Source of the DNA: Raja brachyura
Lineage: Eukaryota
Direction: 5' to 3'
Length of the DNA: 64,000 nt
NCBI GenBank assembly: GCA_963514005.1
Contig: OY740827.1
Coordinates: 2,480,001 to 2,544,000, forward strand
The notes under the pieces are model-generated. The model worked only from the letters and a program-made list of their open reading frames with translations, ran no database searches and was not told the origin of the DNA. Position numbers and translations under genes: made by a program. Positions 2,746-54,049 of the stretch are shown piece after piece. Position 1 is the stretch's first letter; every line of letters starts with the position of its first letter.

Positions 2746-3854
2746 GACAGTTCAGTTTTGGTCACCCTGCTACAGCAAATATGCCGGTAAGGTGGAAAGA
2801 GTGCAGAGAAGATTTTCAAGGGTGCTACTAGGACTTCAGGGATTGAGCAATAGGGAGAGGTTGGGCAGGCACAAACTGTATTCCTCAGAGCACAGGAGGC
2901 TGAGGGGTGGGTGATCTTATAGTGGTGAATATAATCATCAGAAGAATAGATAGCGTGAATGCACAGTCGTTCTTTTCCCAAGGATTTGGTAATCGAGAAC
3001 AAGAAGGCAGAGGGGAATGATTTAATAGGAATCTGAGGGGCAACTTTTTCACACAAAGTGTGGTTGGTATCTGGGAACGAACTGCCAGAGGTTGTAGTTG
3101 GTACAATAACAGCATTTGGACAGATACACAGATAGGAAAGGTTCAGAGAGATATGGGCAAAATGGGACTTATTTAGATGGGACGAGTTGGGCCAAATGGC
3201 CTGTTTCCGTGCTGTACCAATGCACAATTCTGAAACGATGAAGGGTTAGAATGGAATGGATGTGGGGAAGAGCAGAAGTTGAGGCCATCATCAGTAAACA
3301 GCCGTTGGGACCTCAGAGGGACATGGCTTTGCTCAGAGAGAGGTGAGTGGTGGACTTCACTGCCCTCAGGGTGGGTTGAGGCCACAGTAGAAGTAGATTT
3401 AGAGGGAGGTAGGACATTCTGATAAATGAGAAAAGTAGGGTCAGCAGGGCAAGATGGGTCAAATAGCCTGTTTGCATTCTGTAATTCCAGTGTAATCCAA
3501 TGGAGTGATGCATGCTGGAGAATCTCTGTCGCTGCTCGGTCTGGGCTGGAGTTGGGGTTAAGTTATGGTGACTGTTTCTCAGAGCTGGGCTCTCACTGAC
3601 TCCTCTCTCTACCCCTCAGTACATGGCTCGGAAAGGACTTGGAAATGCGTTGCAGCCATGATCGTTCTTGCCGTCATCCTTGCTGCCTCCGTCATCATCA
3701 CCGCAATCTTCTGGGCAACACGTTGTCGCAACAAATGAGGTGCGAGATGATCTGGAAGCTGTCCGAATGTCTTCACTGCCATTTACTGACAGGGCAGATT
3801 GCCCAATATCCTGGACTTGATATTTTTCCTCATCCACATCAGCAAAAACTAATA

Positions 3855-6019: not shown

Positions 6020-6344
6020 CCTCATTTTCTTCCTGAAGGAACGTCCTATAATGCTGAGGCTGTGGCCCTGGTCCTAGACTCTCCCATGAGTAGAAACATC
6101 CTCGGACCCCACTTCCCCGCTTTGTCCTGTTCCACATACTAAACATCACCGACCCTGTCCCAGCCCCACTCGCCCACGGCTAGAACCATATCCTATGCCT
6201 TCCACACCCTGACCGGGACCTGTACAGCGAGGTCAAGCCCTGTTAATGAGCCTCTGCTCAACCCCTCTCAGTGCGCACCCTCCACTCTGCCCACTTTCTC
6301 TGACGTTTCTCTCTGCCCACCTCTCTCTTTCCTTACTCTCTATA

Positions 6345-6555
6345 ATTAATCTCCCTCCCATTGACTCCATCTACACCTCACGCTGCCTCGGCAAGGCCAG
6401 CAGCATCATTAAGGACCAGTCTCACCCCGGCCACTCCCTCTTCTCCCCTCTCCCATTGGGTAAGAGGTACAGAAGTGTGAAAACGAACCCACACCTCCAG
6501 ATTCAGGGACAGTTTCTTCCCAGCTGTTATCAGGCAACTGAATCATCCTACCACA
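6345..6555 (+). mobile_element. Rex1/Babar-clade LINE 3' fragment (also 50320-50735, 52105-52310, 37385-37920 minus)
   Basis: Translation SIYTSRCLGKASSIIKDQSHPGHSLFSPLPLGKRYRSV...SRFRDSFFPAVIRQLN, typical of the Rex1-type RT C-terminus. Confidence 0.7.
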
Positions 6556-35050: not shown

Positions 35051-35131
35051 ACCGGGAGATCGGGGACTGACGGGATATCTGGGATCGGACAATGATCGGG
35101 AGATCGTTCTTCCTCCTCTCCCTTCTCCAAG
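35051..35131 (+). CDS. Leader exon (ATG at 35092; MIGRSFFLLSLLQ + phase-1 G)
   Basis: Acceptor ttttctcttccag ends at 35050 and donor CAAG|gtacca follows. Joined to the V exon it gives the signal-peptide-like MIGRSFFLLSLLQAVVSG|QWS. Confidence 0.75.
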
Positions 35132-38100
35132 GTACCATCAGCAGCAACTCACAAGTGTTTACGGGCGAGGAGGTGTTCACTGGTTGGCTGCCAGTGACTA
35201 GCGGAGTTCCGCAGGGGTCGGTGCTGGGGCCGCTACGATCCTTTCGCTGACCACCTTCGCTCAGTCCGCCTGGACTTACCTGATCTCCCGGTTGCCAAAC
35301 ACTTTAATTCCCCTTCCCATTCCCACATTGATCTTTCTGTCCTAGTTCTCCTCCACTGTCAGGGTGAGGCCAAATGCAAATTGGAGGAACAGCTTCTCAT
35401 ATTTTGCTTGGGCAGCTTACATCCCAGCGGTATGAATATTGATTTCTCTCACTTCAAGTAAACCCTACATTCCCTCTCTCTCCATCGCTCCCTTAGTCTA
35501 GTCGCACCAGATTCTCGTTCTCACTCAACAATCAGCTAACAATGGCTTGTTTTCTTTATCATCATTACTTTCATGCATATCTTTCATTCATTGTTCTCTG
35601 TCTCTCTACATCACCGTCTATATCTCCCGTTGCCCTTTCCCGTGACTTTCAGTCTGAAGAAGGGTCTTGAGCCAAAACGTCACCCATTCCTTCTCTCCAG
35701 AGATGCTGCCTGTCCGGCTGAGTTTCTCCCTATTTTTGTGTCAATCTTCAGTTTAAACCAGCTACTGCAGTTCCTTCCTACACACCACGACTCTTCACGT
35801 TATATATTAATGATTTAGACCAGGGGATTGAAGGCTTTGTGGTCAAGTTTGCAGATGATACGGAAATAGGTGGAGGGGCAGGTAGTGTAGAGAAAGCATG
35901 GACTCTGCTGAAGGACTTGGGCAGGTTGGGAGAGTGGACAGAGAAGTGGCAGATGGAATATACTGGTGCTGCTTGCCCTCCGGACCCTGGCTATAAGGGA
36001 CACTCTACTGGTCCCTGGGAGTGACGCGCAGTGGGGGGGCATTGAAGAGGCAGTAATACACTGTGTGAGGGAGTGACACACACTGGGAGGGGCGGTGAGG
36101 AGGGAGTGACTCACTGTGGGAGGGGCGGTGAAGGAGTGGCACACTGTGGGAGGGGTGGTGAGGAGGGAGTGACACACTGTGGGAGGGGCGGTGAGGAGGG
36201 AGTGACACACTGTGGGAGGGGTGGTGAGGAGGGAGTGACACACTGTGGGAGGGGCGGTGAGGAGGGAGTGACTCACTGTGGGAGGGGCAGTGAGGAGGGA
36301 GTGACACACTGTGGGAGGGGTGGTGAGGAGGGAGTGACACACTGTGGGAGGGGTGGTGAGGAGGGAGTGACTCACTGTGGGAGGGGCAGTGAGGAGGGAG
36401 TGACACACTGTGGGAGGGGCGGTGAGGAGGGAGGCTCTACCCCTACACCACCATGCCGCTCTTCTACGTTCTGTACACACCAGGTCCACAGCGCAGGATA
36501 AAAGGTGGGGAAAGTGAGTCCAGTGAACTGACAGGGTGTTCACTGCTAAAGATTGTTCCTTCTGTCCTCAGCCGTGGTGTCGGGACAGTGGAGTGCGGAC
36601 ACTCCACCAGATGTGACAGTGCAGAATGGTTTGTGTGCACGGATTCCGTGTCGCTACAGGTACCCGTCGAATCTGAACAATAAACCACGGACTGGAATCT
36701 GGTATAACAGTGAGAAGAACAAAGAAGATTCTGTAGCCTTCCACTCCGTGGATCCCAGTCTAGAATCAACAAAGTTTCAGTATCGGACCCGACTGTCAGG
36801 AGTCCTGAGAGACAACGACTGTTCCCTGGTTATAGACAACATCACGCAGCAAGATGCAGGTCCTTATTTTTTCAGAGTTGAATTTGGAGGGGGAAATCGT
36901 TTCAACTACCACCCTGTAACACGGCTCCGTGTTACTGGTAAGTGCTCTGTATAATTCACTCATTCACTCAACAGTTTCTTCCCAGCTATTATCAGGCAAC
37001 TGAACCATCCTACCACAACCAGAGAGCATCAACCTCACTGGTGACCCTCGGACTATCCTTGATCGGACTTTGGACTGTACACGTTCCCTATTCACACACA
37101 CACCACCGCATCAGGATCCTTCTGGTTCATTTCTGGATCACCGTGACACCTCCAGTTTTTGCACTGTTATTACCAGGTTTTCATTGCCCATATATGCTCC
37201 TAATATCAACTCCATCTACACTTCACGCAGCCTGAACTAAACTAAACAATGTCTGTCTTATCCTTACTGCCCTTAGTGGAGAACTCTGTCCCCATCTTCC
37301 CGATCACAGGTCATCATGACATTCCTGATCCCCATCTGTTTCAACCTCCCCTGGCCATTGTACCTCCTTGTTCAGGGATCATCCTTGTTTAGTTTAGTTT
37401 AGTTAGTTAATTTTATTGTCACGTGTACCAAGGTACAGTGGAAAGCTTTTGTTGCGTGCTATCCAGTCAGCAGAAAGACAATACATGATTACCATCGAGC
37501 CGTTTACAGTGTACAGCTGCATGATAAGGGAATAACGTTTAGTGCAAGATTAAGCCAGCAAAGTCCAATCAGGGATAGTGAAGAAGGGTTTCGGCCCGAA
37601 ACGTTGCCTATCTCCTTCGCTCCATAGATGCAGCTGCACCCGCTGAGTTTCTCCAGCATTTTGTGTACCTCTGATCAGGGATAGTCTGAAGGTCACCAAT
37701 GAGCTAGATAGTAGTTCAGGACTGCTCTCTGATTATGGTAGGATGGTTCAGTTGCCTGATAACAGCTGGGAAAAAACTGTCCCTGAATCTGGAGGTGTGT
37801 GTGTTCACATTTCCGTACCTCTTGCCTGGTGGGAGAGTGGAGAAGAGGGAATGATCGGGTATGAGACTCGTCCATGATAATCTGGAGGTGTGTGTTTTCA
37901 CACTTCTATACCTTGTAAACACATCCTTCCTTGTGTGGGACTGGGATTACGATGTGAACCGATGTATCCAGTGATATTTAACTAACAGTATCTGTTTCTG
38001 TGTGCGTTAGATTTCACAGATAACCCCACGATATTCCCTGCTGAAATGGTGGCAGGTCAGCCTGTGAACGTGACCTGCATCTTCAACACCACATGTGATG

Positions 38101-41100
38101 GAACGGCACCCACCTTAACCTGGGTCACCCCCGATTATGAACCAACGTCAGCCTCACACAGCGTAACTCAGCGGGGAGACACTTTGATATATACTTCTGT
38201 TCTGTCCCTGACCCCAGCGCTCAAACATCACGGGGAAAACCTCACCTGCAGAGTCACATACCCAACTGTCTCATCGGAGCAGATCCTCACACTGACTGTG
38301 CAATGTAAGTACGGAGATCGTTTATTGTGCAGGAACAGCAATAATCTATTAGCAGTGCTGGTACATAAGGTCATAAGTGGAAGGAACAGAATTTGGCCAT
38401 TCAGCCCATCAAGTCTACTCCGCCATTCAATCATGGCTGATCTATCTCTCCCTCATAACCCCATTCTACTGCCTTCTCCCCATAACCCCATTCTCCCCAT
38501 AACCCCTGACACCCATACTAATCAAGAATATATCTCTCTCTGCCTTAAAAATATCTATAGACTGCCTCCGCAGCCTTCTATGATAAAGAATTCCACAGAT
38601 TATTCACCCTCTGACTAAAAAAATTCCTCATCTTCTTCCTAAAGAAATGTCCTTTAATTCAGAGACTGTGACCTCTGGTCCTAGACTATCCCACTGGTGG
38701 AAACATCCTCTGCACAACCACTCTATCCAGGCCTCTGCCTGCACGTCATCCATATCCCTCCAGGATCTGCAGTTCCTTCCCACGCTAATCAAATCAATGG
38801 TACGCTGATAAGCTCATCTGTCCTTCACTGATGAGACACTGCCTTGGATACAGGTACTAAACACACAAAGTGCTGGAGTCATAGAGCATTACAGTAGCAA
38901 TGTTACAACATTTTGAGATTTTACAAATCAAGTCTGCAATTTCCCCCATCAGATAAAGCATAAAAAGTAGTTTAATTTGACACCTAATTCAATTTCATAT
39001 CTTCAGTATTAAAAAAGTTATGGCCATTTTCATACTCGGAAATTAGCATCTTGATCCCCATTGCTTTTCCATTGACTTAACTCAAAGGTTATGATCAAGG
39101 ACAGTCAAAAGCCCATAACTTTCTTAAAAATTAAGAGAACTCAATGACATTTTCAGTTATTATGGATTGAAGCATTCTGAAACAAATATGAAACAATCTT
39201 ATTTGGATGAACTGAAATTAAAGCATATAATTAGTTAATTACCTAATTGTAGCTAATTACAAAATTCAATTACTAGATCTAAACTTATCCATTTCTTAAG
39301 AAAAGATAAACATTTTTAAATTGCCTAAGTGTCCAAATAACATTCACACAATAATTCACAATATAACATGATTTTTAAATCTCATTTTCATGAATTTATG
39401 GGCCAAAATGAAGGAATTTAGTGTTAAATTCCTGTAAATTAATGGCCATTTAAATAAGTTGTGAGTGGGTTTTTGTGGAACGCGATGGATGGTGTATGGA
39501 TGCGGACTGGGTGGGCCGCAGGTCCTTTTTCCGCGCTGTCTCTCTAAACAACATAGAAATCGCGTGAACGGGTGATCGATGGTCGGTGGGCACGGTGGGC
39601 TGCATGTCCTTTTTCCGCGCTCTATCTCTAACTAAACAAAGAACTATTGTGTGAAAGGGTGATCGATGGTCGGCGCGGACACGGAGGGCTGAAGGGCCTG
39701 TTTCCGCGTTGTATCTCTAAAGTCTAAAGACTAAACTATTTTACAATCCAAGGATCTCCGAAAGTGCCACAAAACTGGTTGCTGCATTTTATCTGTTTGC
39801 AGACGCTCCCCAGAATCTCTCAATCACTTCCCCCGACAACGTGAACAATTCATGGGTCAGTGTAAAGGAAGGAAACTCTGCAGCGATCCTCTGCTCCGTC
39901 CAGAGTTTCCCAGCGTCTAACCTGATGTGGAGACATCTCGGTGTCACGCTGAACACAACACGTTCCAGCAACGAGCTGTGGATGGAGTTCCCTCAGCTGA
40001 CACAGCAGGATGCCGGGGTCTATCAGTGTGTGGCGGAGAATGAACACGGAACGGCAGAGAGGGATGTTACCCTCACTGTAGAATGTGAGTAGACACACAC
40101 AGACACACCTCTATAAACACAGATGGATTATTCTCTATACAGGCAGATGAGAACTGCATACCCTCTCATTCGTTCTCTCCTGGCAAAGAGCTACCAATTA
40201 CCTGTTTCCTTTCTCATCATTACATTTTTGCCTATCTTTAATTCATTTGTTCTATATCTCTCTACGCCATCGTCTATATCTCTCATTTTCCTTAGCCGTG
40301 ACTTTCAATCTGAAGGAAGGTCTCAACCCAAAACGTCACACATTCCTTCGTTCCAGAGATGTTGCCTGTCCCGCTATGTTGCTCCAGCATTTTGTGTCTA
40401 TCTTTGGTTTAAACCAGCATCTCCAGTTCCTTCCAACACACTCACTCACACCCACACAATTTCTCTTTAGTTTATGTGTGAGAAATAACTGCAGATGCTG
40501 GATATAATCGAAGATAGACACTAAACACTGGAGTAAATCAACGGGTGAGGCAGCATCTATGGAGAGAAGCAAAGGGTGACCTTTCTGGTCGAGACCCTTC
40601 CTCAGACTGATGGGGCGGCGGGAAAAAGATAGAAAGTGGGCGGAGACAGTAGGACGTAGGAGAACTGGGAAGGCAGAGGGGAATGAGTGAGAAAGCAAGG
40701 TCTGTCTGAAATTGGAGAAATCAATCTTCATACCACCAGGGGCGTTGCACGATGAGACAATAGACAATAGGTGCAGGAGTAGGCCATTCGGCCCTTCGAG
40801 CCAGCACCGATATTCAAAGTGATTATGGCAGATCATCCACAATCAGTACCCTGTTCCTGCCTTGTCATATCCCCATGTCTCTGCTATCTTTAAGAGCTAT
40901 ATCTAAATTCTCTTGAAAGCACCCCAAGAACTGGCCTCCACTACCTTCTGAGGCAGAGAATTCCACAGACTCACAACTTTCTGTGAAAACGTTTTTCCTC
41001 ATCTCCATTCTAAATGGCTTACCCCTTATTCTTAAACTATGGCCCCTGGTTCTGGGCTCCCCCCAACATGTCCAAACCCTTAATAATCTTATATGTTTCA

Positions 41101-44100
41101 ATCGACAATAGGTGCAGGAGTAGGCCATTCTGCCCTTTGAGCCAGCACCGACATTCAATGTGATCATGCCTGATCATCCCCACCCAATCAGTGCCCCGTT
41201 CCTGCCTACTCCCCATATCCCGACTCCGCTATTTTTAAGAGCCCATCTAGCTCAATTTTAAGAGCCCATATCTTCACCAACCACCATCTTTCCTTGCTCC
41301 CCTCTCCCCCTTCACTCAGCTTAACCCCCAGCACATCAGTGCAGACGGCAAGGGCTCTGTTCTAAATTGTGTCTTCAAGGAGGTGGTGATGGAAGACAGA
41401 GAGACTCCCATTTCATCAGCACCTTTCACCATCCCTTCTCCCAACTAACAATTATCTATTCTACATTTTCCTTAATCTCCATTCCCTTTGTTCTATTTTC
41501 ACATCTCAGACTTCCCTATCCATGTATCTCCCTCTCCCCTGACATCAGTCAGAAGAAGGATCTCGACCCGAAAACGTCACCCATTCCTTCTCTCCAGAGA
41601 TGCTGCCTGTTCCGCTCAGTTATTCCAGCATTCTGTGTCCATCTTCCATATCCCTCTAAACCCCTGTCCTATCCGCGTAACCGTCTAAATATTTCTTAAA
41701 CATTGCGATAGTACCTGCCTTAGCTACCTCCTCTGGCAACTCGTTCCGTACACCCACATCCCTTGTGTGAAAAGATTACCCCTCAGGTCCCTATTAAATC
41801 TTTCCCCCCCTCACCTTAAACCCATGTCCTCTCGTTCTCATTTCCTCCAACACTCCAAAGACGTACAGACTTGTTGGTTAATTGGCTTTGTATAATTGTA
41901 AATTGTACCCAGTGTGTGTAGGGGTGCTGATGTGAGGGGTGATCGTGGTCGACGCGGACTGGGTGGGCCGCATGACCTTTTTCCGCGCTGTATCTCTAAA
42001 CAACATAGAAATCTCGTGAACGGGTGATCGATGGTCGGTGGGCACGGTGGGCCGAAGGTCCTGTTTCCGCGCTGTATTTCTAAACTAAAGATTAACATTG
42101 TGTGAACGGATGATTAGTGGTCGGAACGGACTCGGTGGGCCAAAGGTCCTGTTTCCCGCTGTATCTCTAAACTAAACGGAACTAGCGTGTGAACGGGTGA
42201 TCGATGGTCGGCGCGGACACGTTGGGGCAAAGGGGCTGTTTCATCGCTGTATCTCTAAAGTCTAAAGACTAAACTATTTTACAATCCAAGGATCACTGAA
42301 AGTGCCACAAAACTGGTTGCTGCATTTTATCTGTTTGCAGACGCTCCCCAGAATCTCTCAATCACTTCCCCCGACAACGTGAACAATTCATGGGTCAGTG
42401 TAAAGGAAGGAAACTCTGCAGCGATCCTCTGCTCCGTCCAGAGTTTCCCAGCGTCTAACCTGATGTGGAGACATCTCGGTGTCACGTTGAACACAACACG
42501 TTCCAGCAACGAGCTGTGGATGGAGTTCCCTCAGCTGACACAGCAGGACGCCGGGGTCTATCAGTGTGTGGCGGAGAATGAACACGGAACGGCAGAGAGG
42601 GATGTTACCCTCACTGTAGAATGTGAGTAGACACACACTGACACATCTCTATAAACACAGATGGATTATTCTCTATACAAGCAGATGAGAACTGCATACC
42701 CTCTCATTCGTTCTCTCCTGGCAAAGAGCTACCAATTACCTGTTTCCTTTCTCATCATTACATTTTTGCCTATCTTTAATTCATTTGTTCTATATCTCTC
42801 TACGCCATCGTCTATATCTCTCATTTTCCTTAGCCGTGACTTTCAATCTGAAGGAAGGCCTCAACCCAAAACGTCACACATTCCTTCGTTCCAGAGATGT
42901 TGCCTGTCCCGCTATGTTGCTCCAGCATTTTGTGTCTATCTTTGGTTTAAACCAGCATCTCCAGTTCCTTCCAACACACTCACTCACACCCACACAATTT
43001 CTCTTTAGTTTATGTGTGAGAAATAACTGCAGATGCTGGATATAATCGAAGATAGACACAAAACACTGGAGTAAATCAACGGGTGAGGCAGCATCTATGG
43101 AGAGAAGCAAAGGGTGACCTTTCTGGTCGAGACCCTTCCTCAGACTGATGGGGCGGCGGGAAAAAGATAGAAAGTGGGCGGAGACAGTAGGACGTAGGAG
43201 AACTGGGAAGGCGGAGGGGAATGAGTGAGAAAGCAAGGTCTGTCTGAAATTGGAGAAATCAATCTTCATACCACCAGGGGCGTTGCACGATGAGACAATA
43301 GACAATAGGTGCAGGAGTAGGCCATTCGGCCCTTCGAGCCAGCACCGATATTCAAAGTGATTATGGCAGATCATCCACAATCAGGACCCTGGTCCCCATG
43401 TCCGCATGTCTCCGCTATCTTTAAGAGCTCTATCTAAATTCTCTTGAAAGCACCCCAAGAACCGGCGTCCACTACCTTCTGAGGCAGAGGATTCCACAGA
43501 CTCACAACTCTCTGTGTGAAAAAGTTTTTCCTCATCTCCATTCTAAATGGCTTACCCCTTATTCTTAAACTATGGCCCCTGGTTCTGGGCTCCCCCCAAC
43601 ATGTCCAAACCCTTAATAATCTTATATGTTTCAATAGACAATAGGTGCAGGAGTAGGCCATTCTGCCCTTCGAGCCAGCACTGACATTCAATGTGATCAT
43701 GGCAGATCATCCACAATCAGTACCCCATTCCTGCCTTCTCCTCACATCCCCATGTCTCACGCTATCTTTCAGAGCACCTTTCACCATCTCTTCTCCAAAC
43801 TAACAATTATCAATTCTACATTTTTCTTAACTCCATTCCCTTTGTCCTATTTTCACATCTCATACTTCCTTATCTATGTATCTCCCTCTCCGCTGGCATC
43901 TAAATATTTTCAGAAGTGATAAATCTGGCTGTAAAATTTTAAAATCGCCCATGGTTCTCAAGTGGGTTTTTACATAAAACAAGAAAATGCCTCTGAAGCA
44001 AAATTTATCATTAAAAAAATCGCAAACCATACGTGGGTTTTGAATTATATTTTATTCAGATGCAAGCTAAGGAATTGGAAAATTGTTAACTGTTAATTGG

Positions 44101-47100
44101 ACATAATCAACCTCAGGATATTGACAATGTGGGTGTTTAAGGTGTCAGGACATTTTATTACTTGCCAAAATATACATCTCAATAGTATAAAGATAGAAAA
44201 GTTACTTTTCCACACACCACTCGTAAATCTGGAGATTTTTTTAATGATAAACCGAATGATTCAAACGTTTAAAGCCTCCTGTGGAGGCTGCTTCTGAAGC
44301 AAAAGCGTGCTTTAAATAACGTCCAACATACACTCACCATAGACAGAGCAGTCTGCTCTCTTGAATTATTGAACAACGTCTTCACTCTGTGCCTTCTGCA
44401 GTTAGCGCCAACTTGCCACGAACTGGAAATGACGCACTCAGCGCCATCTTGCTGCTAATCGGAAATGACATCATCGCCACCATCTTCCCACTAAGCAGAA
44501 GTCACGGAATGAGTGCCAATTTTGCAACTAAACACAGTCCTGATCTAATAAAATGTTTATTCACGCTTTATCCATCCGGAAACTGTTGCAACCATTTTAA
44601 AAGCCAAGAGAAACAAATTTGCAAACTCTTTGTAACCAATACATTTCCTGAAAACATTTTTCTAACCGCCAAGGGAAACAAATTTGCAACCACTTTACAA
44701 CCAATACATTTTCTGAAAAAACACACACACTCAATCACACACTCACAACCAATACTAAAATGCCAAGTAACTTCAGAACTTGGTAAACATACAGTGTATA
44801 AACCGAATGATTCAAACGCTTAAAGGCTCATGTAGAGGCTGATGCTGAAGCAAAAACATGCTTTAAATAACGTCCAACAAACACACTCACCATAAACAGA
44901 GCAGTCAGCTCTCTTCAATTATTCAACAACATCTTCACTCTGTGTCTTCTAGAGCCAGCGCCATCTTGCCACAAACCGGAAATGATGCACTGAATGCCAT
45001 CCTGCCGCTAACTGGAAATGACGTAATTGCCGCCATCTTGCCACTAAGCAGAAGTCACGGAATGAGCGCCAATTTTGCAATTAAATGCAGTCCTGAACTA
45101 ATAAAATGTTTACTAACGCTTTATCCATCCGAAACTGTTGCAACCATTTTAAAAGCCAAGACAAACAAATTTGCAAATACTCTCTAACCAATACGTTTTC
45201 TGAAAACATTTTTTTTAAAGCCAAGAGAAACAAATTTGCAAACTCTTTCTAACCAATACATTTTCTGAAAACATTTTTTAAAAGCCAAGAGAAACAAATT
45301 TGCAAACTCTTTAAAACCAATACATTTTCTGAAAACATTTTTTAACAGCCAAGAGAAACAAATTTGCAAACACTTTACAACCAATACATTTTCTGAAAAA
45401 ACACACACACTCACAACCAACACTAAAGTGCCAAGTAACTTCAGCATGCTTTAAATAACGTCCAACAAACACACTCACCATAGGCAGAGCAGTCATCTCT
45501 CTTGAATTATTCAACGACGTCTTCACTCTGTGCCTTCTGCAGTTAGTGCCATCTTGACGTTAACCGGAAATGATGTCATCGGCGGCGTCTTGCCACTTAA
45601 CAGAAGTCATGGAATGAGTGCCAATTGTGCAATTAAACACAGTCTTGATCTAATAAAATGTTTATTCACGCTTTATCCATCCAAAAACTGTTGCAACCAT
45701 TTTAAAACCAAGACAAACAAATGTGCAAATACTTTTTAAAACCAATACGTTTTCTGAAAACATTTTTTTAAAGCCAAGACAAACAAATTTGCAAATGCTT
45801 TACAACCAATACGTTTTCAGAAAATATTTTTTTAAGCCAAGACAAACACATTTGCAAACATTTTTTAACCAATAAATTTTCTGAAACATTTTTTTAAAGC
45901 CAAGAGAAACAAATTTGCAAACTCTTTACAACCAATTCATTTTCTGAAAACATTTTGTTTAAAGCCAAGAGAAACAAATTTGCAAACACTTTACAACCAA
46001 TACATTTTCTGAAAATAACAGACACACACACTCACTCACAACCAATACTAAAATGCCAAGTAACTTCAGAACGTGGTAAACATACATTGTGTAAACCGAA
46101 TGATTCAAATGATTAAAGCCTCCTGTAGATGCTGCTGCTGAAGCAAAAACATGCTTTAAATGACGTCCAACAAACACACTCACCATAGACAGAGCAGTCA
46201 GCTCTCTTAAATTATTCAATGACATCTTCGCTCTGTGTCTTCTGCAGTCAGCTCCTTCTTCTTCTTTCGTGTGGCGTGCACAGCCTAAAGTTGTTGGACA
46301 ACTTGTTCTATTTGATCTTCCGTTTGTGCATGTCGAATTGATTGCATTAGTCAAAACAGGGCGGTCGACGTGACCCATTTTGCCACGAACCGGAAATGAC
46401 GCACTCAACGCCATCTTGCCGCTAACAAAAAATGACATCATCGGCGCCATCTTGCCACTGAGCGGAAGTCATGGAATGAGTGCCAATTTTACAATTAAAC
46501 ACAGTCCTGATCGAATAAAATGTTTATTCACGCTTTATCCATCTGAAAACTGTTGCGACCATTTTAAAAGACAAGAAAAACAAATGTGCAAATACTTTAC
46601 AACCAATACATTTTCTGAAAACAAAAAAATAAAAACCAAGACAAACAAATTTGCAAACACTTTTGTAACCAATCCATTTTCTGAAAACATTTTTTTAACA
46701 GCCAAGAGAAACAAATTTGCAAACACTTTACAACCAATACGTTCAGTGTTATTCGCAGCTCAGAGAGCCGTGACCCACTTGCTTCCTAGGTCTGGCAGAG
46801 ACTGAGTGAGGCACGAATCTTCCTGCTTTTATAGTCTCTCCCGCTGCTGCCAGCGGGGGAAGCAGAAAGAATGGTGATTTTAAAAAAACATTAATATCTC
46901 TGATTTTTCATCGATAGGAAAAATCCTCTGGTCCAAGAAGGCGGAGGTGGGCTTTGAGCGAGGAGCCTAAAATGACGGCCGTAGGTAGCGGTGTTCTCTC
47001 GGAAATCACAGCACAGTGAGCCAAAAGCGGTCAAGAAAAGGCTTTTAGTAATATAGATAGATATAGAGAGAAAAAGAACAATGATTGAAAGATATGCAAA

Positions 47101-50100
47101 AAAGCAACGAGGATAGAGGAAACAGACCATTGTTAGCTGTTTGTTGGGTGAAAACGAGAAGCTGGTGCACCTTGGGTGGAGGAGGGATAGATCAAGAGGG
47201 AATGCCGGAGCTACTTGAACTTAGAGACATCAATATTCACACCACTGGGTTGTAAGTTGCCCAAGTGAAATATGAGATGCTGTTCCTCCAATTTGTGTTT
47301 TGTCTGTTCAGCTTTGGTCACCCTGTTACAGAAAATAAACTATTAAGCTAGAAAAAGTGCAGAGAAGATTTTCAAGGATGCTACTAGGACCTGAGGGATT
47401 GAGCGATAGGGAGAGGTTGGGCAGGCATAAACTTTATTCCTCAGAGCACAGGAGGCTGAGGGGTGGGTGATCTTATAGTGGTGAATATAATCATGAGAGG
47501 AATAGATATGGTGAATGGACAGTCGTTCTTTTCCAAGGATACGGTAATCGAGAACTAGAAGGCACTGGGAATGATTTAATAGGAATCTGAGGTGCACCTT
47601 TTTCACACAAAGGGTGGTTGGTATCTGGGAACGAACTGCCAGAGGATGCAGTTGAAGTTGGTACAATAACAACATTTGGACAGATACACAGATAGGAAAG
47701 GTTCAGAGAGATATGGGCCAAATAGGACCTAGATGGAACGTCTTGGTTGGCATGGACGAGTTGGGCCAAAGGGCCTGTTCCATGTTGTACCACTCCACGA
47801 CTCTGAAACAATGAAGGGTTAGGATGGAATGGATGTGGGGAAGAGCAGAAGTGGAGGCCATCAACAGTAAACAGCCATTGGGTCCTCAGAGGGACATGGC
47901 TTTGTTCAGAGAGATGAGTGGTGGACCGCACTGCCCTCAGGGTGGGTTGAGGCCACAGTAGAAGTAGATTTAGAGGGAGGTAGGACATTCTGATAGATGA
48001 GGAAAGTAGGGTCAGCAGGACAAGATGGGCTGAATGGTCTGTTTCCGTTTTGTGATTCCAGTGTAATCCAATGGAGTGCTGTGTGCTGGAAAATCTCTTT
48101 CGCTGCTCGGCCTGGGCTGGAGTTGGGGTTAAATTGTCATGTCTGTTTCTCACTGACTCCTCTCTCCACCCCTCAGTAAGTGGCTGGGACAGGACTGGGA
48201 AATGCGTCGTGGCCGTGATCGTTCTTGCCATCATCCTTGGCGTCGTTACTGTCTCCGTCATCATCATCGCAATCTTCTGGGCAGCGCGTTGCCGCAGCAA
48301 AGGAGGTCTTCACTGCCATTTACTCAAGAGAGAGAGAGGGGGCGGGGGGGTGGGGGGTGGGCGATACACACTGCATCAACCTGAAATCAGGGCCCTCTCC
48401 AAAACCTAACTCCCCCCACCCCACCGCTACCACCGTGTTTTGGAGAGGGGCAGGGCAGATTGCCCAAGTATTCTGGCACTGATATTCATACCTCATCCGC
48501 ATCAGCGAAAACAACGTCATCTGGGAACAATCTCAGTGCCGCTCACAATCCCATTCCCCACTGTCCCCACTCCACATGGACCAAAACTCCCACCCCAATC
48601 CCTCTCACTGTCCACACTCCCAATGGACCCATCCTTATCTCAATGGGGTTAGGTTAGGTAAGGGGGAGGTGCAGCAAGACCTGGGTGTCCTTGTACTGAA
48701 AGTTGGCGTGCAGGTACAGCTGGCAGTGAAGAAAGCTAATGGAATGTTGGCCTTCATAACAAGAGGATTTCAGTACAGCAGTAAAGAGGTTCTTCTGCAG
48801 TTGTATAGGGCTCTGGTGAGACCACATCTGGAGTATTGTGTACAGTTTTGGTGTCATAATTTGAGGAAGGACATCCTTGTGATTGAGGCAGTGCAGCGTG
48901 GTTCACGAGATTGATCCCTGGGATGGCGGGACTGTCATATGAGGAAAGATTGAAAAGACTAGGCTTGTATTCACTGGAATTTTGAAGGATGATGGGGATC
49001 TTATAGAAACATATAAAAGATATAAAATTATAAATGGACATGACAAGCTAGGTGCAGGAAAAATGTTCCCAATGTTGAGTGAGTCCAGAACCAGCGGTCA
49101 CAGTCTTAGAATAAAGGGAAGGTCATTTAAGACTGAGGTGAGAAAAAACATTTTCACCCAGAGTTGTGAATTTATGGAATTCCCTGCCACAGAGGGCAGT
49201 GGAGGCCAAGTCACTGGATGGATTTAAGGGAGAGTTACAAAGAGCACTAGGGGCTAGTGGAGTCAAGGGATATGGGGAGAAGGCAGGCACAGGTTATTGA
49301 TAGGGGACAATTAGCCATGATCACAATGAATGGCGGTGCTGGCTCGAAGGGCCGAATGGCCTCCTCCTCCACCTATTTTCTATGTCTATGTCTATCCTCC
49401 TCCCCAATCCCTGTCACCGTCCACAGCTCCCCATCCTCTCCCTCTGCCCACAAACCCCATAGACCAAACCCTTCCTCATTCCCTCCCTCCACACTCCTAA
49501 TACACCAAAACTCCCTCCCCATTCTCCCCCTCTCCCCACACTCCCAATAGACTGAAACTCTCTCCCCATTCCCTCTCCCCACACTCCCCATTGATTTAAA
49601 CTCCCTCCCACATTCTCCCCACTGCCCACACTCCTCATACACCATCCTTTTCCTATTCACTTCCACATATCAATAGATCCTAAGAATTGCCCATCCACAG
49701 AGTTTCAGTCGAGCCAAACCCCTTCCCAGAGGGATGATCCAAGAACATTTACAGTGGGAGAAAGACTGAATAAGGTAATAAGTGATAGGAGGAGTATTAG
49801 GCCATTCAGCCCACCAAATCTACACCACCATTCAATCATGGCTGGTCTATCTCTTCTTCCTAACCCCATTCTCCTGCCTTCTCCCCATAACCACTGACAC
49901 CAGTACTAATGAATGGGAAAAGACATGGAAGGGAGGAGGAATAGGGAAATGGAAGGTGTTCAAGAGAATGAATGTGAGGGAGGGAGGGAGGGAGGGAGGG
50001 AGGGATTGAAGTGCAACGGTGTGAGAGAGGTTGAATGTGAAAGATGTGTATTGAGAATGAATGTTGAAAGGAATGTGGAAGAGTGAGAGGGAGGGAGAAG

Positions 50101-52004
50101 GATGAATGAAGGAATTCCCAAAGAAAGAGTGATGGGAGACAGAAGCAAAGAGGAAAGCGAGTGGTCTGAATGAAATTCTGTCTTCCAGAAAGTTCCGTGA
50201 TGCAGCGGAAGGAGCAGAAAGCTGAAGATGGGCCGGTGGAGTCCCCCTATCAGGTTGGTACTGTTGTGGCAAAGAGGCAGATCAGCATTTGTCCCCTTGT
50301 TGTCCCTCCACACCAGCACTGCCCCATGGATACTAACTCCATCACCTCACGCTGCCTCGGCAATGCCAGCAGCATCAAGGACCAGTCGCACCCCGGCCAC
50401 TCCCTCTTCTCCCCTCCCCCATCTGGCAAGAGGTACAGAAGTGTAAAAACACACCTCCAGATTCAGGAACAGTTTCTTCCCAGCTTCTATCAGGCAATTG
50501 AACCATCCTTCCACAACCAGAGAGCGGTCCTGAACTAATATCTACCTCATTGATGCCCCTCGGACTATCTTTGCTGGCTTTACCTTGCACTAAATGTTAT
50601 TCCCTTATCATGCGTCTCTACACCGTAAATGGCTCGATTGTAATCATGCATTGTCTTTCCGCAGACTGGTTAGCATGCTGCAACAAAAGCTTTTCACCGT
50701 ATATCGGTACTTGTGACAATAAGCTAAACTGAACTAAACACTTCCCCCCCCTCCCTGTGTCGGGCACCAACCATCTCCCCCATTCCTGCCCACCAAACCC
50801 ACATCACCGTCCCCACCCCGTCACCGTCTTTCCCCCAGGATACTGACGCCCCTCAACACACTGAATCCCTCCAGCATATCCCACTTTGCCCACTGAGACT
50901 GACCCACGATGTTCATAAGTGATGGGAGCAGAATTAGCCCATTCAGCCCATCAAGTCTACTCCGCCGTTCAATCATGGCTGATCTATCTCTCGTCCCCAA
51001 CCCCATTCTCCTGCCTTCTCCCCATAACCCCTGACACCCGTACTAATCTCTGCCTAAAAAATATCCACTGACACGACCTCCACAGCCGTCTGTGGCAATG
51101 AATCCCACAGATTCCTCTGATGAAAGAAATTCCACCTCATGGTCTTTCTAAAAGAACATCCTTTTATTCTGAGGCTGTGGCCTCTGGTCCTAGAATCTCC
51201 CACGGAACCCACCTTCCCACTCCATCCCATTCCACGTACTAAACATCACCAACCCTGTCCCTGCCCCACACCTCAACATTCACTCCCCTGTACCCACCCC
51301 GAGCTCAGTGAAGGTCCCTCCACCTCCAGACTCTGTAACCACCTCCCCTCCGGCCCCTGCACCCCTCCCTGTCTCTGTAACCCCTTCCCTCCCTTCCCTC
51401 CCCTCCAGCCTCTACACCGTGCAGGCTGCTTATTCTATTCCTATGACCGCTGTTTCTTGGAGAGGGTCCAGGGGAGGTTTACAAGAATTACCCCAGGAAT
51501 GAGTGGGTTAACATATGATGAGTGCTTGACAGCACTGGGCCTGTACTCACTGGAGTTGAGGAGGTTGAGCGGGGACCTCATTGAAACGTACAGAATAGTA
51601 AAATGCCTGGATAGAGTGGATGTGGAGAGGATGGTGGGGGAGTCTAGGACCAGAGGTCATAGCCTGAGAATTAAAGGGCGCTCTTTTATAAAGGTGAGGA
51701 GTAACCTCTTTAGCCAGAATGTCGTTAATCTGTGGAACTCATTGCCACAGAGGGTTGTGGAGGCCAAGTCAGTGAATATTTTTAAGACAGAAATAGATCA
51801 ATTCTTGATTGGAAAGGGTGTCAAGGGTTTTGTGGAGAAATCAGGAAAATAGGGTTAGGAGTCAGATCAGCCATGACTGAATGACAGAGTAGACTTGATG
51901 GGCCAAATGGCCTAATTCTACAACTATAACTTGAGAACTTCTTTTCCTCACAGGAGCTGCATCTCGGCGACCGGGATCTGTACAGCGAGGTTAAGCCCTG
52001 TTAA
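35092..52004 (+). CDS. Spliced Siglec-like (CD33/MAG/CD22 family) type I receptor with DAP12-like ITAM tail; join(35092..35131,36572..36937,38011..38304,39803..40084,42341..42622,48177..48305,50189..50253,51954..52004), 502 aa
   Basis: All introns are GT..AG with compatible phases (1,1,1,1,1,1,0). The exons sum to 1509 nt, open from ATG to TAA. Domain order is leader, V-set, C2-set, Ig, Ig, TM, tail. The donor after the TM exon (GAG|GTCTTC) is weak, so intactness is uncertain. Confidence 0.75.
35235..35785 (+). mobile_element. Penelope-like element 3' fragment (GIY-YIG C-terminus and pseudo-LTR)
   Basis: Translation FADHLRSVRLDLPDLPVAKHFNSPSHSH...KLEEQLLIFCLGSLHPSGMNIDFSHFK*, then a hammerhead-like core at about 35653-35682. 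Confidence 0.8.
36070..36432. repeat. 33-bp G-rich minisatellite (gagtgacacactgtgggaggggcggtgaggagg), ~11 copies, intronic
   Basis: Directly visible; ends about 140 bp upstream of the V-set exon. Confidence 0.95.
36572..36937 (+). CDS. Siglec-type V-set Ig domain exon
   Basis: Bounded by tctgtcctcag| and |gtaagt. Carries the Siglec motifs VQNGLCARIPC, DCSLVIDNI and DAGPYFFRVE (cf. CD33 GLCVLVPC / NCSLSI / YFFRME), including the essential F-strand Arg. Confidence 0.93.
38011..38304 (+). CDS. Siglec-type C2-set Ig domain exon (domain 2)
   Basis: Bounded by gcgttag| and |gtaagt. Reads DFTDNPTIFPAEMVAGQPVNVTCIFNTTCDGTAPTLTW...HHGENLTCRVTYP...LTLTVQ. The extra Cys after the B-strand Cys is the Siglec inter-domain disulfide partner. 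Confidence 0.92.
39803..40084 (+). CDS. Ig (C2/I-set) domain exon, copy 1
   Basis: Bounded by tgtttgcag| and |gtgagt. Reads YAPQNLSI...VKEGNSAAILCSVQSFPASNLMW...DAGVYQCVAENEHG...LTVE. Confidence 0.92.
42341..42622 (+). CDS. Ig (C2/I-set) domain exon, copy 2 (tandem duplicate)
   Basis: Same splice sites and same peptide as 39803..40084, at an offset of 2538 bp. Confidence 0.88.
43898..47058 (-). mobile_element. Helitron-like non-autonomous element with hierarchical internal tandem repeats
   Basis: Minus strand begins A|TCTATATTACTAAAAG (47043-47058), like a Helitron 5' TC end. It contains about 4 units of 550-650 bp, each with ~58-bp subrepeats (aaagccaagagaaacaaatttgcaaac...accaatacattttctgaaaac). 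No CTRR 3' end found. Confidence 0.5.
48177..48305 (+). CDS. Transmembrane exon (DAP12-TM-like, uncharged)
   Basis: Acceptor tcctctctccacccctcag. Reads LSGWDRTGKCVVAVIVLAIILGVVTVSVIIIAIFWAARCRSKG: a hydrophobic span followed by basic stop-transfer residues. A paralogous exon lies at 3620. Confidence 0.85.
48650..49390 (+). mobile_element. CR1-clade LINE 3' fragment (copy B only)
   Basis: Translation AVKKANGMLAFITRG...LYRALVRPHLEYCVQFW, plus 3' UTR. Confidence 0.85.
50189..50253 (+). CDS. Cytoplasmic exon 1 (ESSVMQRKEQKAEDGPVESPYQ), first half of ITAM
   Basis: Bounded by ttctgtcttccag| and TATCAG|gttggt; phase 1 in, phase 0 out. A unique-sequence island between repeats. Confidence 0.8.
51455..51925 (+). 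mobile_element. CR1-clade LINE 3' fragment immediately upstream of last exon acceptor
   Basis: Translation LERVQGRFTRITPGMSGL.Y...LYSLELRRLSGDLIETYRI...FSQNVVNLWNSLP. Confidence 0.85.
51954..52004 (+). CDS. Terminal coding exon (ELHLGDRDLYSEVKPC*), second half of ITAM
   Basis: Acceptor cttcttttcctcacag, phase 0, TAA at 52002-52004. Completes YQEL-x7-YSEV. Confidence 0.82.
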   Translation, partial: ELHLGDRDLYSEVKPC

Positions 52005-54049
52005 TGAGCCTCTGCTCAACCCCTCTCAGTGCGCACCCTCCACTCTGCCCACTTTCTCTGACGTTTCTCTCTGCCCACCTCCCTCTTTCCTTACTCTCTA
52101 CAATCAATCTCCCTCCCATTGACTCCATCTACATCTCACGCTGCCTCGGCAAGGCCAGCAGCATCATCAAGGACCAGTCTCACCCCAGCCACTCCCTCTT
52201 CTCCCCTCTCCCATTGGGTAAGAGGTACAGAAGTGTGAAAATGAACGCACACCTCCAGATTCAGGGACAGTTTCTTCCCAGCTGTTATCAGGCAACTGAA
52301 TCATCCTACCACAAGATTACCCATGACTCTGCCCATGACCGTACTACGTCTTTTTCGTTGAGTGGACTATCTTGCTCGCCATAGGATCTTTGCTCGTGAT
52401 CACCGTATTTTATATGCCCCGCGAACCTGAGGGCCGACCCACACAGGGGGTTGTCTGACACTTGCCCAACAACAGATATCGATTAACCCCATATATAACA
52501 GACATCTCCCTGACCCAATAATACAACAGCTCAACACATTGTATTCCTATCGGACTCCAGGGTGAAGTCAATTATTGGAACATGTCCCCTGATTTACAGG
52601 GTTTCCAGACAAGGCTTAACACTTCATCCAATAAACATCCAGCAGAGTCAGAGTCTGCAACATTATATATAACTTATTTACAAATGTATATCTAGTTTGC
52701 AACCACCCAATCCATTCTATGCATTTGGTATCAGATTGACAAGGCTTGCAGGTTCCCAACCCTTTGGCATATAAATTGTATCAAGCTCCAGACTCTCTGG
52801 CACCTCTCGCAGCCTGTCCCAGCTCTGCAGAGATCATTCCCAATCTGACCAAATCTCCCAACAAGCCCTGTAATTTAGCCCCATTTTACAAGCCCTGACT
52901 GGTCCAATTTAGCCAGGATTAACATTCCTTGTAAATTGTCCCCAGCGAGTGTGGGATAGTGCGGGGATCGCTTGTCGGCGTGGACTCGGTGGGCCACAGG
53001 GCTTTATTCTGCGCTGTATCTCCAAACTTATCCTAGAACTAGAGTGTGAACGAGTGATGGATGGTTGGTCAGGGTTAGGTGGGCCGAAGGGTCTGTTTCC
53101 ATGCTTAAAAAATTAAATGCTGCTAATGGTCTTGCCATTATCTCCACACTCTCTCCTTGTGCCTTCAACCTCCCAACGTGCAACACCGAACCCTTGCTCG
53201 GATTAAACTCCATCTGCCATTTCTCCGCCCCTTTCTGCATCTAATCTTCATCCCGCAGTATCTTCCGGCAGCTTCCTCACTGTCTGCAACTCCTCCAATC
53301 TTGGTGTCGTCACCAAACCCACGCAGCCACAGATCGCCAGCATCTTCACACATGCACTCTGACGGTGAGGGACATCGCCCCCATGTGGTCCTGGACATTT
53401 TTGCCACTGTAAATAGAATAAAGCAAAGATCCTATAGCGGACCAAGGTAGACCACTCCTGCTAAATGCAATGGGCTGACGTGTAGTACGCAAGACAACGG
53501 AGCGGAACGTGGGCCTTTTTTGTTAATTATTAATATGTTAACAAATTATGATTCTGTTAATTGTCTTTTTTAATGTTTTTAAATAAAGCTTTTCTTTTTA
53601 AATGGCTCATGTGGTGTGTTTGAGTTTGAGTTGATTTTTGTATTACACTTGCACTCTGTAATTCATCTAATCACACTGTTCACAACTGCGGTATTTGGAA
53701 AATAATAACAATATGAAGATTCCAGTTGCTCGAGGAATGTTCCTTAATGATCCTTAATGATTTTTTGTGTCTATGGAATTGTTTTTCAACAATAAAATGG
53801 GTCTGGTCTTCCCAACAGCCAGAGAATGAAATGAGATCTGTCTGTAATGGTGGGGTTATCTAAATGAAGTATTTAACAAAATAAAATTTGTTTTGAGCTA
53901 GATTAAAAAATGAAGTATAACTTAAGGATGGTTTTATTCAGTGACCATACAACTGATTAGATTGTGTAGATTCATTAGTAGGACTGCATGTTACAATCCC
54001 GATGATTTTTCACTACAATTGGCATTCTTGGGGATGACCACTAGGTGAT

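What the first reader, a model, noticed from the sequence alone, without database searches (positions are those of the whole stretch)
35092..52004. Siglec-like receptor with a built-in DAP12/TYROBP-type ITAM: candidate natural chimeric activating lectin receptor
Seen: a Siglec ectodomain is followed on the same strand, in compatible phases, by a TM exon and two small exons not apparent from the ORF track (50189-50253, 51954-52004). They splice to ...QRKEQKAEDGPVESPYQ|ELHLGDRDLYSEVKPC*. Known (from recall): human DAP12 reads ...[33 protein letters not shown] is identical, the spacer is also 7 residues, and as I recall the last TYROBP intron also falls in phase 0 after YQ. Characterised Siglecs either carry ITIMs or recruit DAP12 in trans through a TM Lys/Arg (Siglec-14/15/16); they do not normally carry the ITAM themselves. 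CD22, MAG and TYROBP are neighbours on human 19q13.1, so local exon shuffling is plausible. Inference: the ectodomain was fused to the last three exons of a tyrobp duplicate, giving a single-chain sialic-acid sensor that could signal through Syk directly. Caveat: the distal motif is YSEV rather than YxxL/I.
Basis: partly seen in the sequence, partly recalled or inferred. Interest (0 to 1): 0.93.

Follow-up and report, generated by a model that had tools for sequence, protein, structure and literature searches.

The report
Skate Siglec gene with built-in ITAM
This is an eight-exon gene of a skate-like fish for a sialic-acid-lectin (Siglec) surface receptor whose own tail carries an activation motif (ITAM), a design already present in automatic gene predictions of two other rays, though this copy has a weak splice site and an off-consensus second motif.

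Summary
They are a leader, a Siglec-type V-set, one C2-set, two near-identical Ig exons, a stalk/TM exon and two small tail exons. The tail reads ESPYQ|ELHLGDRDLYSEVKPC*.

The architecture is not unique. NCBI models of Rhinoraja longicauda (at least 6) and Pristis pectinata (2) join the same ectodomain to the same TM and ITAM tail. Three other models pin both tail introns to the same places. So this is one member of a ray/skate Siglec expansion with ITIM, YxN, ITAM and tail-less classes. The scan had already flagged two sister loci in this genome (s1-880908, s1-881407).

The TYROBP-capture origin is not shown:
- The TM has no acidic residue.
- No search recovered DAP12.
- The phase-0 Yx|xL split is generic to ITAMs.

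New caveats for this copy:
- The TM-exon donor (GAG|gtcttc) is no better than a random GT, after a 29-nt deletion. An in-frame substitute donor lies 51 nt downstream.
- The second motif is YSEV, not YxxL/I.
- The neighbouring paralogue has already lost its ITAM (TGA at the end of its TM exon, first tail exon gone).

The reads call gave no verdict on the junctions. I could not find the design described in the papers searched.

The parts
35092..35131 (+). Exon 1: ATG plus signal-peptide exon (13 codons + 1 nt, phase 1), donor AAG|gtacc
   Evidence: Read directly. The N-terminus MIGRSFFLLSLLQ-A-VVSGQW is identical to that of transcript-size Logan contig proteins and NCBI models of relatives, which confirms the exon 1 to exon 2 joint in kin.
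36572..36937 (+). Exon 2: Siglec-type V-set domain (366 nt, phase 1 to 1) with a CxxxxC plus E-strand Cys pattern and the FFRVE arginine
   Evidence: Pfam V-set 47.4 bits and Ig_CD22 27.9 bits, cut-off 27. PDB hits are MAG, sialoadhesin, CD33 and Siglec-5/7/8/10/15 at E 1e-15 to 1e-9. The Arg aligns with MAG YYFRGD and sialoadhesin YNFRFE.
38011..38304 (+). Exon 3: C2-set Ig domain (294 nt, phase 1 to 1)
   Evidence: Pfam C2-set_2, E 1e-9. 83-89% identical to skate Siglec models.
39803..40084 (+). Exon 4: I-set-like Ig domain, copy a of a 2538-bp tandem duplication
   Evidence: Pfam I-set/Ig_3. Acceptor ttgcag| and donor AAT|gtgagt. Duplication shown.
42341..42622 (+). Exon 5: Ig domain copy b. 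The protein is identical to copy a, with 2 synonymous differences in 282 nt against about 4.5% in the flanking intron.
   Evidence: About 12.7 differences would be expected at the intron rate (Poisson P about 3e-4, my arithmetic). So both copies are kept by selection or by conversion.
48177..48305 (+). Exon 6: stalk with Cys, uncharged TM helix and basic stop-transfer (phase 1 to 1). Its donor GAG|gtcttc is very weak. An in-frame substitute donor GGG|gtgggc follows 48356 (+17 codons).
   Evidence: It is the only hydrophobic TM candidate downstream of the Ig exons. 70-72% identical to the TM part of P0201, P0202 and P0205. Donor PWM score -4.6, the 51st percentile of all GT in the window, against the 88th-99.9th for the other donors. 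A 29-nt deletion relative to the upstream copy is visible.
50189..50253 (+). Exon 7 (T1): cytoplasmic spacer plus the first half of the ITAM, ending ...VESPYQ in phase 0
   Evidence: 19/21 identical to R. longicauda models. The partial model P0262 ends exactly at ...ESPYQ. P0186 inserts VGTVVAKRQ there, which equals the translation of window 50254-50280. Both pin the intron position.
51954..52004 (+). Exon 8 (T2): ELHLGDRDLYSEVKPC plus TAA. The first AATAAA downstream is at 52630.
   Evidence: 11/15 identical to the Pristis pectinata P0013 tail.
3620..3739 (+). TM exon of the upstream tandem paralogue, with TGA (3736-3738) where the studied gene has GGA. This is the 'tail-less' class.
   Evidence: AATAAA at 3934 and 3954. 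The same ...CR(N/S)K* ending is seen in P0226, P0227, P0237 and in Logan contig proteins P0224, P0264 and P0265.
6211..6246 (+). Relic of the 3' two-thirds of T2 in the upstream paralogue (DRDLYSEVKPC**). It lacks the acceptor and the first 15 nt, and no T1 exon is present.

Best explanation
The stretch is one gene of a large, tandemly duplicated Siglec-like receptor family of batoid cartilaginous fishes. It belongs to the subclass whose last three exons form a 'stalk-Cys + uncharged TM + split ITAM' module.

Shown:
- The exon structure and phases.
- The Siglec-type V-set with the sialic-acid arginine.
- The same ectodomain-TM-ITAM architecture in annotated proteins of a skate and a sawfish.
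- ITIM-bearing, YxN-bearing and tail-less paralogues with related ectodomains.

Inferred mechanism:
- The V-set binds sialylated ligands.
- Clustering lets Src-family kinases phosphorylate the two tail tyrosines.
- A Syk/ZAP-70-type tandem-SH2 kinase docks directly, without a DAP12-type adaptor. The TM has no charged residue with which to recruit one.
- The gene would then be the activating counterpart of its ITIM paralogues. CEACAM3 and CEACAM28 are that to CEACAM1.

This copy looks like a weakened member. A 29-nt deletion left a poor TM-exon donor, and the distal motif is YSEV. Its upstream neighbour shows the end state of the process: a stop at the end of the TM exon and lost ITAM exons.
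For: - Exon model and phases.
- Pfam V-set and Ig_CD22.
- Siglec-only top PDB hits with aligned Arg and Cys pattern.
- Single TM candidate and no alternative tail exon.
- Homologues with an identical architecture and an almost identical tail: R. longicauda P0201, P0202, P0205, P0234, P0261 and P0263, which include XP_078251090, -091, -092 and -464, and Pristis pectinata P0013 and P0219.
- Intron positions pinned by P0262, P0186 and P0191.
- Pfam ITAM hits on homologues at E 0.002-0.009.
- ITIM, YxN and tail-less classes intermingled with ITAM on the V-set tree of skates.
- Purifying signal on the duplicated Ig exons.
- No poly(A) signal close behind the TM exon, unlike the tail-less neighbour.
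- The phase-0 split is typical of ITAMs (PMC5112662).
Against: - There is no transcript evidence for this gene. The single reads call was swamped by repeats and listed none of the three junctions.
- No transcript-derived protein with this tail was found in the length ranges searched.
- The donor at 48305 scores like a random GT.
- The second motif has V at +3, while all homologues have L or I.
- The T2 3' part is 97% identical to a non-functional relic upstream. Its state may therefore have been copied from, or shared with, a dead copy.
- Skate-to-skate conservation is uninformative. Even the intron read-through is identical over 9 codons.
- Pfam ITAM scores are below the gathering cut-off.
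Confidence: 0.68

Rival explanations
1. This copy is on its way to the tail-less class. The 29-nt deletion has disabled the TM-exon donor. The mRNA then reads through into an ITAM-less tail of about 35 residues, or is degraded. Exons T1 and T2 would be still-intact relics.
For: - Donor PWM score -4.6, at the 51st percentile of all GT in the window.
- The deletion is seen against the upstream copy and against the read-through of P0191.
- The distal motif YSEV and the shortened C-terminus are shared with the dead upstream relic.
- The tail-less class is real and transcribed in relatives.
- The neighbour shows exactly this fate.
Against: - All eight exons are open and in phase.
- The T1 and T2 splice sites are good.
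- An in-frame substitute donor exists at 48356.
- There is no stop at the exon end and no nearby poly(A) signal, unlike the tail-less neighbour.
- The GT of the donor is retained.
Confidence: 0.25
2. One reading: the last three exons are a captured duplicate of tyrobp (DAP12) that lost its TM aspartate. The protein would then be a receptor-adaptor chimera.
For: - ESPYQEL is identical to human DAP12. The antibody peptides [14 protein letters not shown] and DVYSDLNTQRPYYK are given in PMC11335228.
- The family consensus ends YSDL, as in DAP12.
- The module has a membrane-proximal Cys, a single ITAM at the C-terminus and a three-exon layout.
- Adaptor, CEACAM and SIGLEC genes share the extended LRC region on human 19q13 (PMC2110893).
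Against: - There is no acidic TM residue in any member.
- No PDB hit for the TM exon or for T1 at E up to 10.
- The ESM Atlas look-alikes for the TM plus tail or the tail alone are not TYROBP.
- E-x-x-Y-x-x-L and the phase-0 split are generic ITAM features.
- By my hand comparison, made from recall, the inter-tyrosine part (ELxLGxR) is about as close to the first CD3-zeta ITAM as to DAP12.
- If capture occurred, it predates the skate-sawfish split and is not local or recent.
Confidence: 0.2
3. The tail does not act as an ITAM. It acts as ITIM-like or endocytic tyrosine motifs. SPYQEL fits S-x-Y-x-x-L, and YSEV recalls the distal xEYSE(I/V) motif of CD33-type Siglecs.
For: Read directly from the motifs. 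V at +3 is allowed in ITIM and ITSM but is not in the ITAM consensus quoted in PMC5112662.
Against: - The Y-to-Y spacing of 11 residues, the acidic residue at -3 and the phase-0 split match ITAM.
- The ITIM paralogues of the same family have a different TM and a different tail, VYANL...VEYAEL, with much wider spacing.
- Homologues have a canonical YxxL/I at both sites.
Confidence: 0.1

Closest known systems
Activating Siglecs of mammals (Siglec-14, -15, -16, mouse Siglec-H)
   Same: They have a Siglec V-set with the essential Arg and are activating counterparts of ITIM Siglecs within a gene cluster.
   Different: They have a Lys or Arg in the TM and borrow the ITAM from DAP12 in trans (PMC7226832). 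Here the TM is uncharged and the ITAM is encoded by the receptor gene itself.
CEACAM3 / CEACAM28-type receptors (ITAM in the receptor's own tail, paired with ITIM CEACAM1)
   Same: They are single-chain IgSF receptors with a built-in ITAM or ITAM-like motif, split by a phase-0 intron. They are paired with ITIM paralogues and show fast birth-and-death evolution (PMC2110893 and PMC5112662).
   Different: The ectodomain family differs. The CEACAM N domain lacks the Siglec cysteines and the sialic-acid Arg. The tail sequences are unrelated.
DAP12 / TYROBP
   Same: It shares ESPYQEL, a 7-residue spacer, YSDL in the family consensus, a membrane-proximal Cys and one C-terminal ITAM.
   Different: DAP12 is a roughly 110-aa adaptor with its own leader and a TM Asp. 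The module here has no acidic TM residue and no leader. No similarity outside the motif was detected.
NCBI gene models XP_078251090/-091/-092/-464 (Rhinoraja longicauda, 'Siglec-13') and the Pristis pectinata 'MAG-like' and 'CD33-like' models P0013 and P0219
   Same: They show the same domain order and the same TM and ITAM tail. T1 is 86-90% identical and the TM exon 70-72% identical to the skate models. T2 is 73% identical to Pristis P0013.
   Different: Those carry canonical YSDL, YSEL or YSDI and a longer C-terminus. The window's V-set is only 70-71% identical to them and lies nearest (85%) to Amblyraja radiata XP_032868245.

Membership tests
Siglec family | N-terminal V-set Ig domain of the Siglec/CD22 type | tested here: met
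   Pfam V-set 47.4 bits and Ig_CD22 27.9 bits, cut-off 27. The 18 best PDB hits are all Siglecs, E 1e-15 to 1e-9.
Siglec family | Essential arginine on strand F, plus flanking aromatic residues | tested here: met
   FFRVE aligns with MAG YYFRGD and sialoadhesin YNFRFE. The N-terminal Trp aligns with sialoadhesin W2. Phe stands at the W106 position.
Siglec family | Unusual cysteine pattern: CxxxxC in strand B, an E-strand Cys, and an extra Cys in domain 2 | tested here: met
   CARIPC and NDCSL in exon 2, and TCIFNTTC in exon 3. Read directly and aligned to MAG and sialoadhesin.
Siglec family | Binds sialylated glycans | not testable with these tools
   Needs a glycan array or cell-binding assay with an Arg-to-Ala control.
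ITAM-bearing receptor | (D/E)xxYxx(L/I) first half | tested here: met
   ESPYQ|EL across exons 7 and 8. Consensus as quoted in PMC5112662.
ITAM-bearing receptor | Spacer of 6-8 residues, then Yxx(L/I) | tested here: not met
   The 7-residue spacer is met, but the second motif is YSEV. Homologues have YSDL, YSEL or YSDI.
ITAM-bearing receptor | Phase-0 intron splitting Yx|xL | tested here: met
   Exon 7 ends in phase 0 after YQ. The same border is seen in P0262 and P0186.
ITAM-bearing receptor | Pfam PF02189 at or above the gathering score | tested here: inconclusive
   Homologues P0263 and P0013 score 16.9 and 18.7 bits against a cut-off of 22.2. The window's joined tail was not scanned, because joined models were not to be searched.
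ITAM-bearing receptor | Recruits Syk/ZAP-70 after tyrosine phosphorylation | not testable with these tools
   Needs a biochemical or reporter assay.
TYROBP (DAP12)-derived module | Acidic residue in the TM helix | tested here: not met
   There is no D or E in the TM of the window's gene or of any homologue.
TYROBP (DAP12)-derived module | Sequence similarity to DAP12 beyond the ITAM consensus | tested here: inconclusive
   Only ESPYQEL is shared. There was no hit in PDB or the ESM Atlas. No elasmobranch DAP12 sequence could be fetched.
Paired (activating/inhibitory) receptor family | Related ectodomains joined to opposing tails in the same taxa or cluster | tested here: met
   ITIM, ITAM, YxN and tail-less tails are intermingled in one well-supported skate V-set clade (98/94). 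A tail-less paralogue lies 45 kb upstream in the window.

The most novel reading that the evidence does not exclude
An ancestor of rays and skates fused a DAP12-like 'Cys-stalk + TM + ITAM' module onto a Siglec ectodomain. That created adaptor-independent activating sialic-acid receptors. These now cycle within tandem arrays between ITAM-bearing, weakened and tail-less states, and this window catches two of those states side by side.
Probability: 0.25. Interest if true: 0.75.

Novelty: new variant of a known kind. Interest (0 to 1): 0.55.

Why it matters
Textbook Siglec biology, based on mammals, holds that activating Siglecs signal only through a charged TM residue and DAP12. A cartilaginous-fish Siglec clade with the ITAM in cis would show that this rule is lineage-specific. 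It would also mean the cis-ITAM solution known from CEACAM3 and FcγRIIA arose in the Siglec family too.

The clade offers a natural single-chain sialic-acid sensor for comparative and synthetic work. The cluster also shows how such receptors are lost: a stop at the TM exon, loss of ITAM exons and splice-site decay. That bears on how paired-receptor families turn over.

The interest is tempered for four reasons:
- The design is already visible in automatic annotations.
- It was flagged twice before in this genome.
- It lacks transcript proof here.
- This copy may be a weakened one.

Tried and rejected
- **Reads:** The runs that hold the stretch are DNA or of uncertain kind. Laid at 90% likeness they were dominated by interspersed repeats. 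None of the 15 joints shown is 48305>50189 or 50253>51954, and 198 further joints were not shown. This gives no verdict on splicing.
- **The look-up of encoding contigs:** The R. longicauda and Pristis loci could not be fetched for exon-by-exon DNA comparison.
- **DAP12 comparison:**
  - PDB searches with T1 (21 aa) and the TM exon (42 aa) found nothing at E up to 10.
  - Two ESM Atlas look-ups of a homologue's TM plus tail gave only weak, unrelated small TM proteins or nothing.
  - A length-matched search using the open frame over T1 found no candidate sharing three words.
  - A blank in any of these is not evidence of absence.
- **Tail-restricted search:** A search with P0263 residues 327-406 returned only R. 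longicauda proteins. No transcript-derived (Logan) protein carried the ITAM tail.
- All searches were exon by exon, by reference. The joined protein was therefore not scanned against Pfam ITAM, not folded and not searched.
- **Complex prediction** was not used. No binding claim rests on it.
- **Separate tyrobp-like gene:** I considered and rejected the idea that the three 3' exons form a separate gene. No leader-like or other TM exon lies between 42622 and 48177. Part of that interval (44.4-46.8 kb) is a ~553-bp direct-repeat array with ~64-bp tandem sub-repeats.
Full report
**Observation**

Each follows a pyrimidine-rich tract and an AG, and the first two are followed by GT. I completed the model upstream by hand:
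- leader 35092-35131
- V-set 36572-36937
- C2-set 38011-38304
- two Ig exons, 39803-40084 and 42341-42622

All Ig exons and the TM exon are phase 1 to phase 1. The 65-nt exon T1 starts in phase 1 and ends in phase 0 after ...VESPYQ. The last exon T2 reads ELHLGDRDLYSEVKPC and stops at TAA. Exon sizes add up to 1509 nt, about 502 codons. Every search was made exon by exon, by reference.

**What the ectodomain is**

- Exon 2 hits Pfam V-set and, just above its cut-off, Ig_CD22.
- Against the PDB its 18 best matches are all Siglecs: MAG, sialoadhesin, CD33 and Siglec-5, -7, -8, -10 and -15, at E 1e-15 to 1e-9.
- The printed alignments put its FFRVE arginine on the sialic-acid arginine of MAG and sialoadhesin. 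They also show the Siglec cysteine pattern.
- The other exons are C2-set and I-set-like Ig domains.
- The two Ig exons lie in a 2538-bp tandem duplication. They differ at 2 synonymous sites in 282 nt, while the surrounding intron differs by about 4.5%. So both copies appear to be maintained.

**Is the tail really part of this gene?**

Downstream of the Ig exons the + strand holds a single convincing TM segment, the one at 48177-48305. I found no other ITIM or ITAM exon and no leader for a separate small gene.

The strongest support comes from relatives. A library-wide HMMER search with the V-set exon, and a follow-up search, returned several hundred cartilaginous-fish Siglec-like proteins. Among them are six Rhinoraja longicauda models (P0201, P0202, P0205, P0234, P0261, P0263, which include XP_078251090, -091, -092 and -464). 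Two Pristis pectinata models (P0013, P0219) are also among them. All of these join such ectodomains to a TM and a tail that is almost the window's own...KEQKAEDGPVESPYQELRLGERDLYSDL... in the skate and ...ESLYQELRAGNRDLYSEL... in the sawfish.

The window's T1 is 19/21 identical and its TM exon 70-72% identical to the skate models. Three imperfect models pin the intron positions:
- A partial model stops exactly at ...ESPYQ (P0262).
- P0186 inserts nine residues after SPYQ that equal the translation of window 50254-50280.
- P0191 runs on after the TM exon into what is intron in the window's neighbour.

The leader exon and its joint are confirmed by identical N-termini in relatives, including proteins from transcript-size Logan contigs.

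Direct RNA evidence for this gene is missing.

**The family**

Tails fall into four classes:
- ITIM (VYANL...VEYAEL type), by far the commonest class in stingrays
- a YxN type
- the ITAM type
- a tail-less type that ends ...CR(N/S)K right after the TM

On a V-set tree of skate and sawfish members the classes are intermingled inside one well-supported skate clade. The window's V-set sits nearest an Amblyraja radiata model (85% identity), not inside the R. longicauda ITAM group. ITAM tails therefore occur on several ectodomain lineages. That fits modular exchange or repeated loss in a birth-and-death family of paired receptors. In the sample I retrieved, the ITAM tail was seen only in skates and the sawfish, not in sharks or stingrays. 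That sample was chosen by ectodomain similarity and is not a census.

**New points about this copy**

1. *Weak donor.* The donor of the TM exon, GAG|gtcttc, scores -4.6 on a simple 5' splice-site matrix. That is the 51st percentile of all GT dinucleotides in the window, while the other six donors lie at the 88th to 99.9th. Alignment with the upstream paralogue shows that a 29-nt deletion removed the original intron start (gtgcga...) and kept a GT only by microhomology. The read-through of P0191 shows the same longer form. A better, frame-compatible donor (GGG|gtgggc) follows position 48356 and would add 17 codons.
2. *Off-consensus motif.* The second motif is YSEV. Every homologue has L or I at +3.
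3. *A decayed neighbour.* The window also holds the 3' end of the next paralogue upstream, about 45.7 kb away.
   - Its TM exon carries TGA where this gene has GGA.
   - Poly(A) signals lie about 200 nt downstream of that stop.
   - It has no T1 exon.
   - It keeps only the last two-thirds of T2 as a relic, 97% identical to this gene's and also coding YSEV-KPC.

   This neighbour matches the tail-less class seen in NCBI models and in Logan contigs of 1.4-1.5 kb. It suggests that class arose from ITAM-type genes.

This gene has no stop at the exon end and no nearby poly(A) signal. I therefore still favour an ITAM-bearing product, but only at about 0.6 for this copy. For the family I put it at about 0.85-0.9.

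**The TYROBP idea**

Human DAP12 does contain ESPYQEL and ...DVYSDL (antibody peptides in PMC11335228). The family consensus resembles it. The rest of the argument is generic:
- E-x-x-Y-x-x-L is the ITAM consensus.
- The phase-0 split of YxxL is called characteristic of ITAMs in CEACAMs too (PMC5112662).
- The TM has no acidic residue in any member.
- Searches with the TM exon, T1 or a homologue's TM plus tail never returned DAP12.
- I could not obtain an elasmobranch DAP12.

If a capture happened, it predates the skate-sawfish split. I rate the origin claim as open, at about 0.2.

**Comparison and novelty**

The nearest functional analogues are CEACAM3 and CEACAM28, with a cis ITAM paired with ITIM CEACAM1 (PMC2110893). 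Mammalian Siglec-14, -15 and -16 reach the same end in trans through DAP12 (PMC7226832).

Full-text searches for Siglec with ITAM and cartilaginous fish, shark, skate or teleost found no description of a Siglec with its own ITAM. The design is, however, visible in public automatic annotations. ITAM-like tails also occur on Siglec-type models of a bowfin, a seabream and a frog. The scan had already flagged two sister loci in this genome. For one of them (s1-880908) a follow-up agent reached the same reading.

I therefore class it as a new variant of a known kind, of moderate interest.

Noticed in passing
window 2514-3741 and 6211-10145: This is the 3' end of an upstream tandem paralogue, with a duplication unit of about 45.7 kb. 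The TM-exon region is 85% identical to 47065-48307, but the 3' flank is 95-97% identical to 51969-56000. The two parts therefore have different histories, either conversion or a more recent duplication of the flank. The paralogue is of the tail-less class: TGA at 3736-3738, T1 missing and T2 truncated.
   Followed up: yes
window 48305-48334 compared with 3739-3797: A 29-nt deletion lies right at the TM-exon donor of the studied gene, relative to the neighbour and to the read-through of R. longicauda P0191. It leaves GAG|gtcttc.
   Followed up: yes
window 44408-46800: An array of roughly 553-bp direct repeats, with internal 63-66-bp tandem units, sits inside the 5.5-kb intron between the last Ig exon and the TM exon. 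It is AT-rich.
   Followed up: no
window 36067-36433: A 33-bp minisatellite (11 copies, 92% matches) lies in intron 1, just upstream of the V-set exon. It creates long spurious ORFs on both strands.
   Followed up: no
window 22749-25734 (+), 18645-20344 (+), 54581-58435 (-), 8885-12308 (-): Transposable-element ORFs. A DIRS-like unit carries a reverse transcriptase, a Dam-like methyltransferase hit and a tyrosine recombinase (23420-25731). LINE-type RT ORFs lie at 18.6 kb and at 55-56 kb. The 54.6-58.4 kb ORFs lie in or just past the segment duplicated at 7.2-10.1 kb, so they are probably the counterparts of the 8.9-12.3 kb ORFs; only the part up to 56.0 kb was aligned.
   Followed up: partly
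proteins P0103, P0105, P0089: Predicted Siglec/CD22-type proteins outside cartilaginous fishes also end in ITAM-like motifs. They are bowfin XP_066575221, black seabream KAM8735390 and African bullfrog XP_072282880. A cis ITAM on Siglec-type ectodomains may therefore be more widespread than the literature suggests.
   Followed up: partly
protein P0186 (R. longicauda XP_078251266): This model uses a donor 27 nt further downstream after SPYQ. That inserts 9 residues and destroys the first YxxL. It is either an annotation artefact or a natural ITAM-disabling isoform. In the window the corresponding site is CAG|at and cannot serve as a donor.
   Followed up: partly
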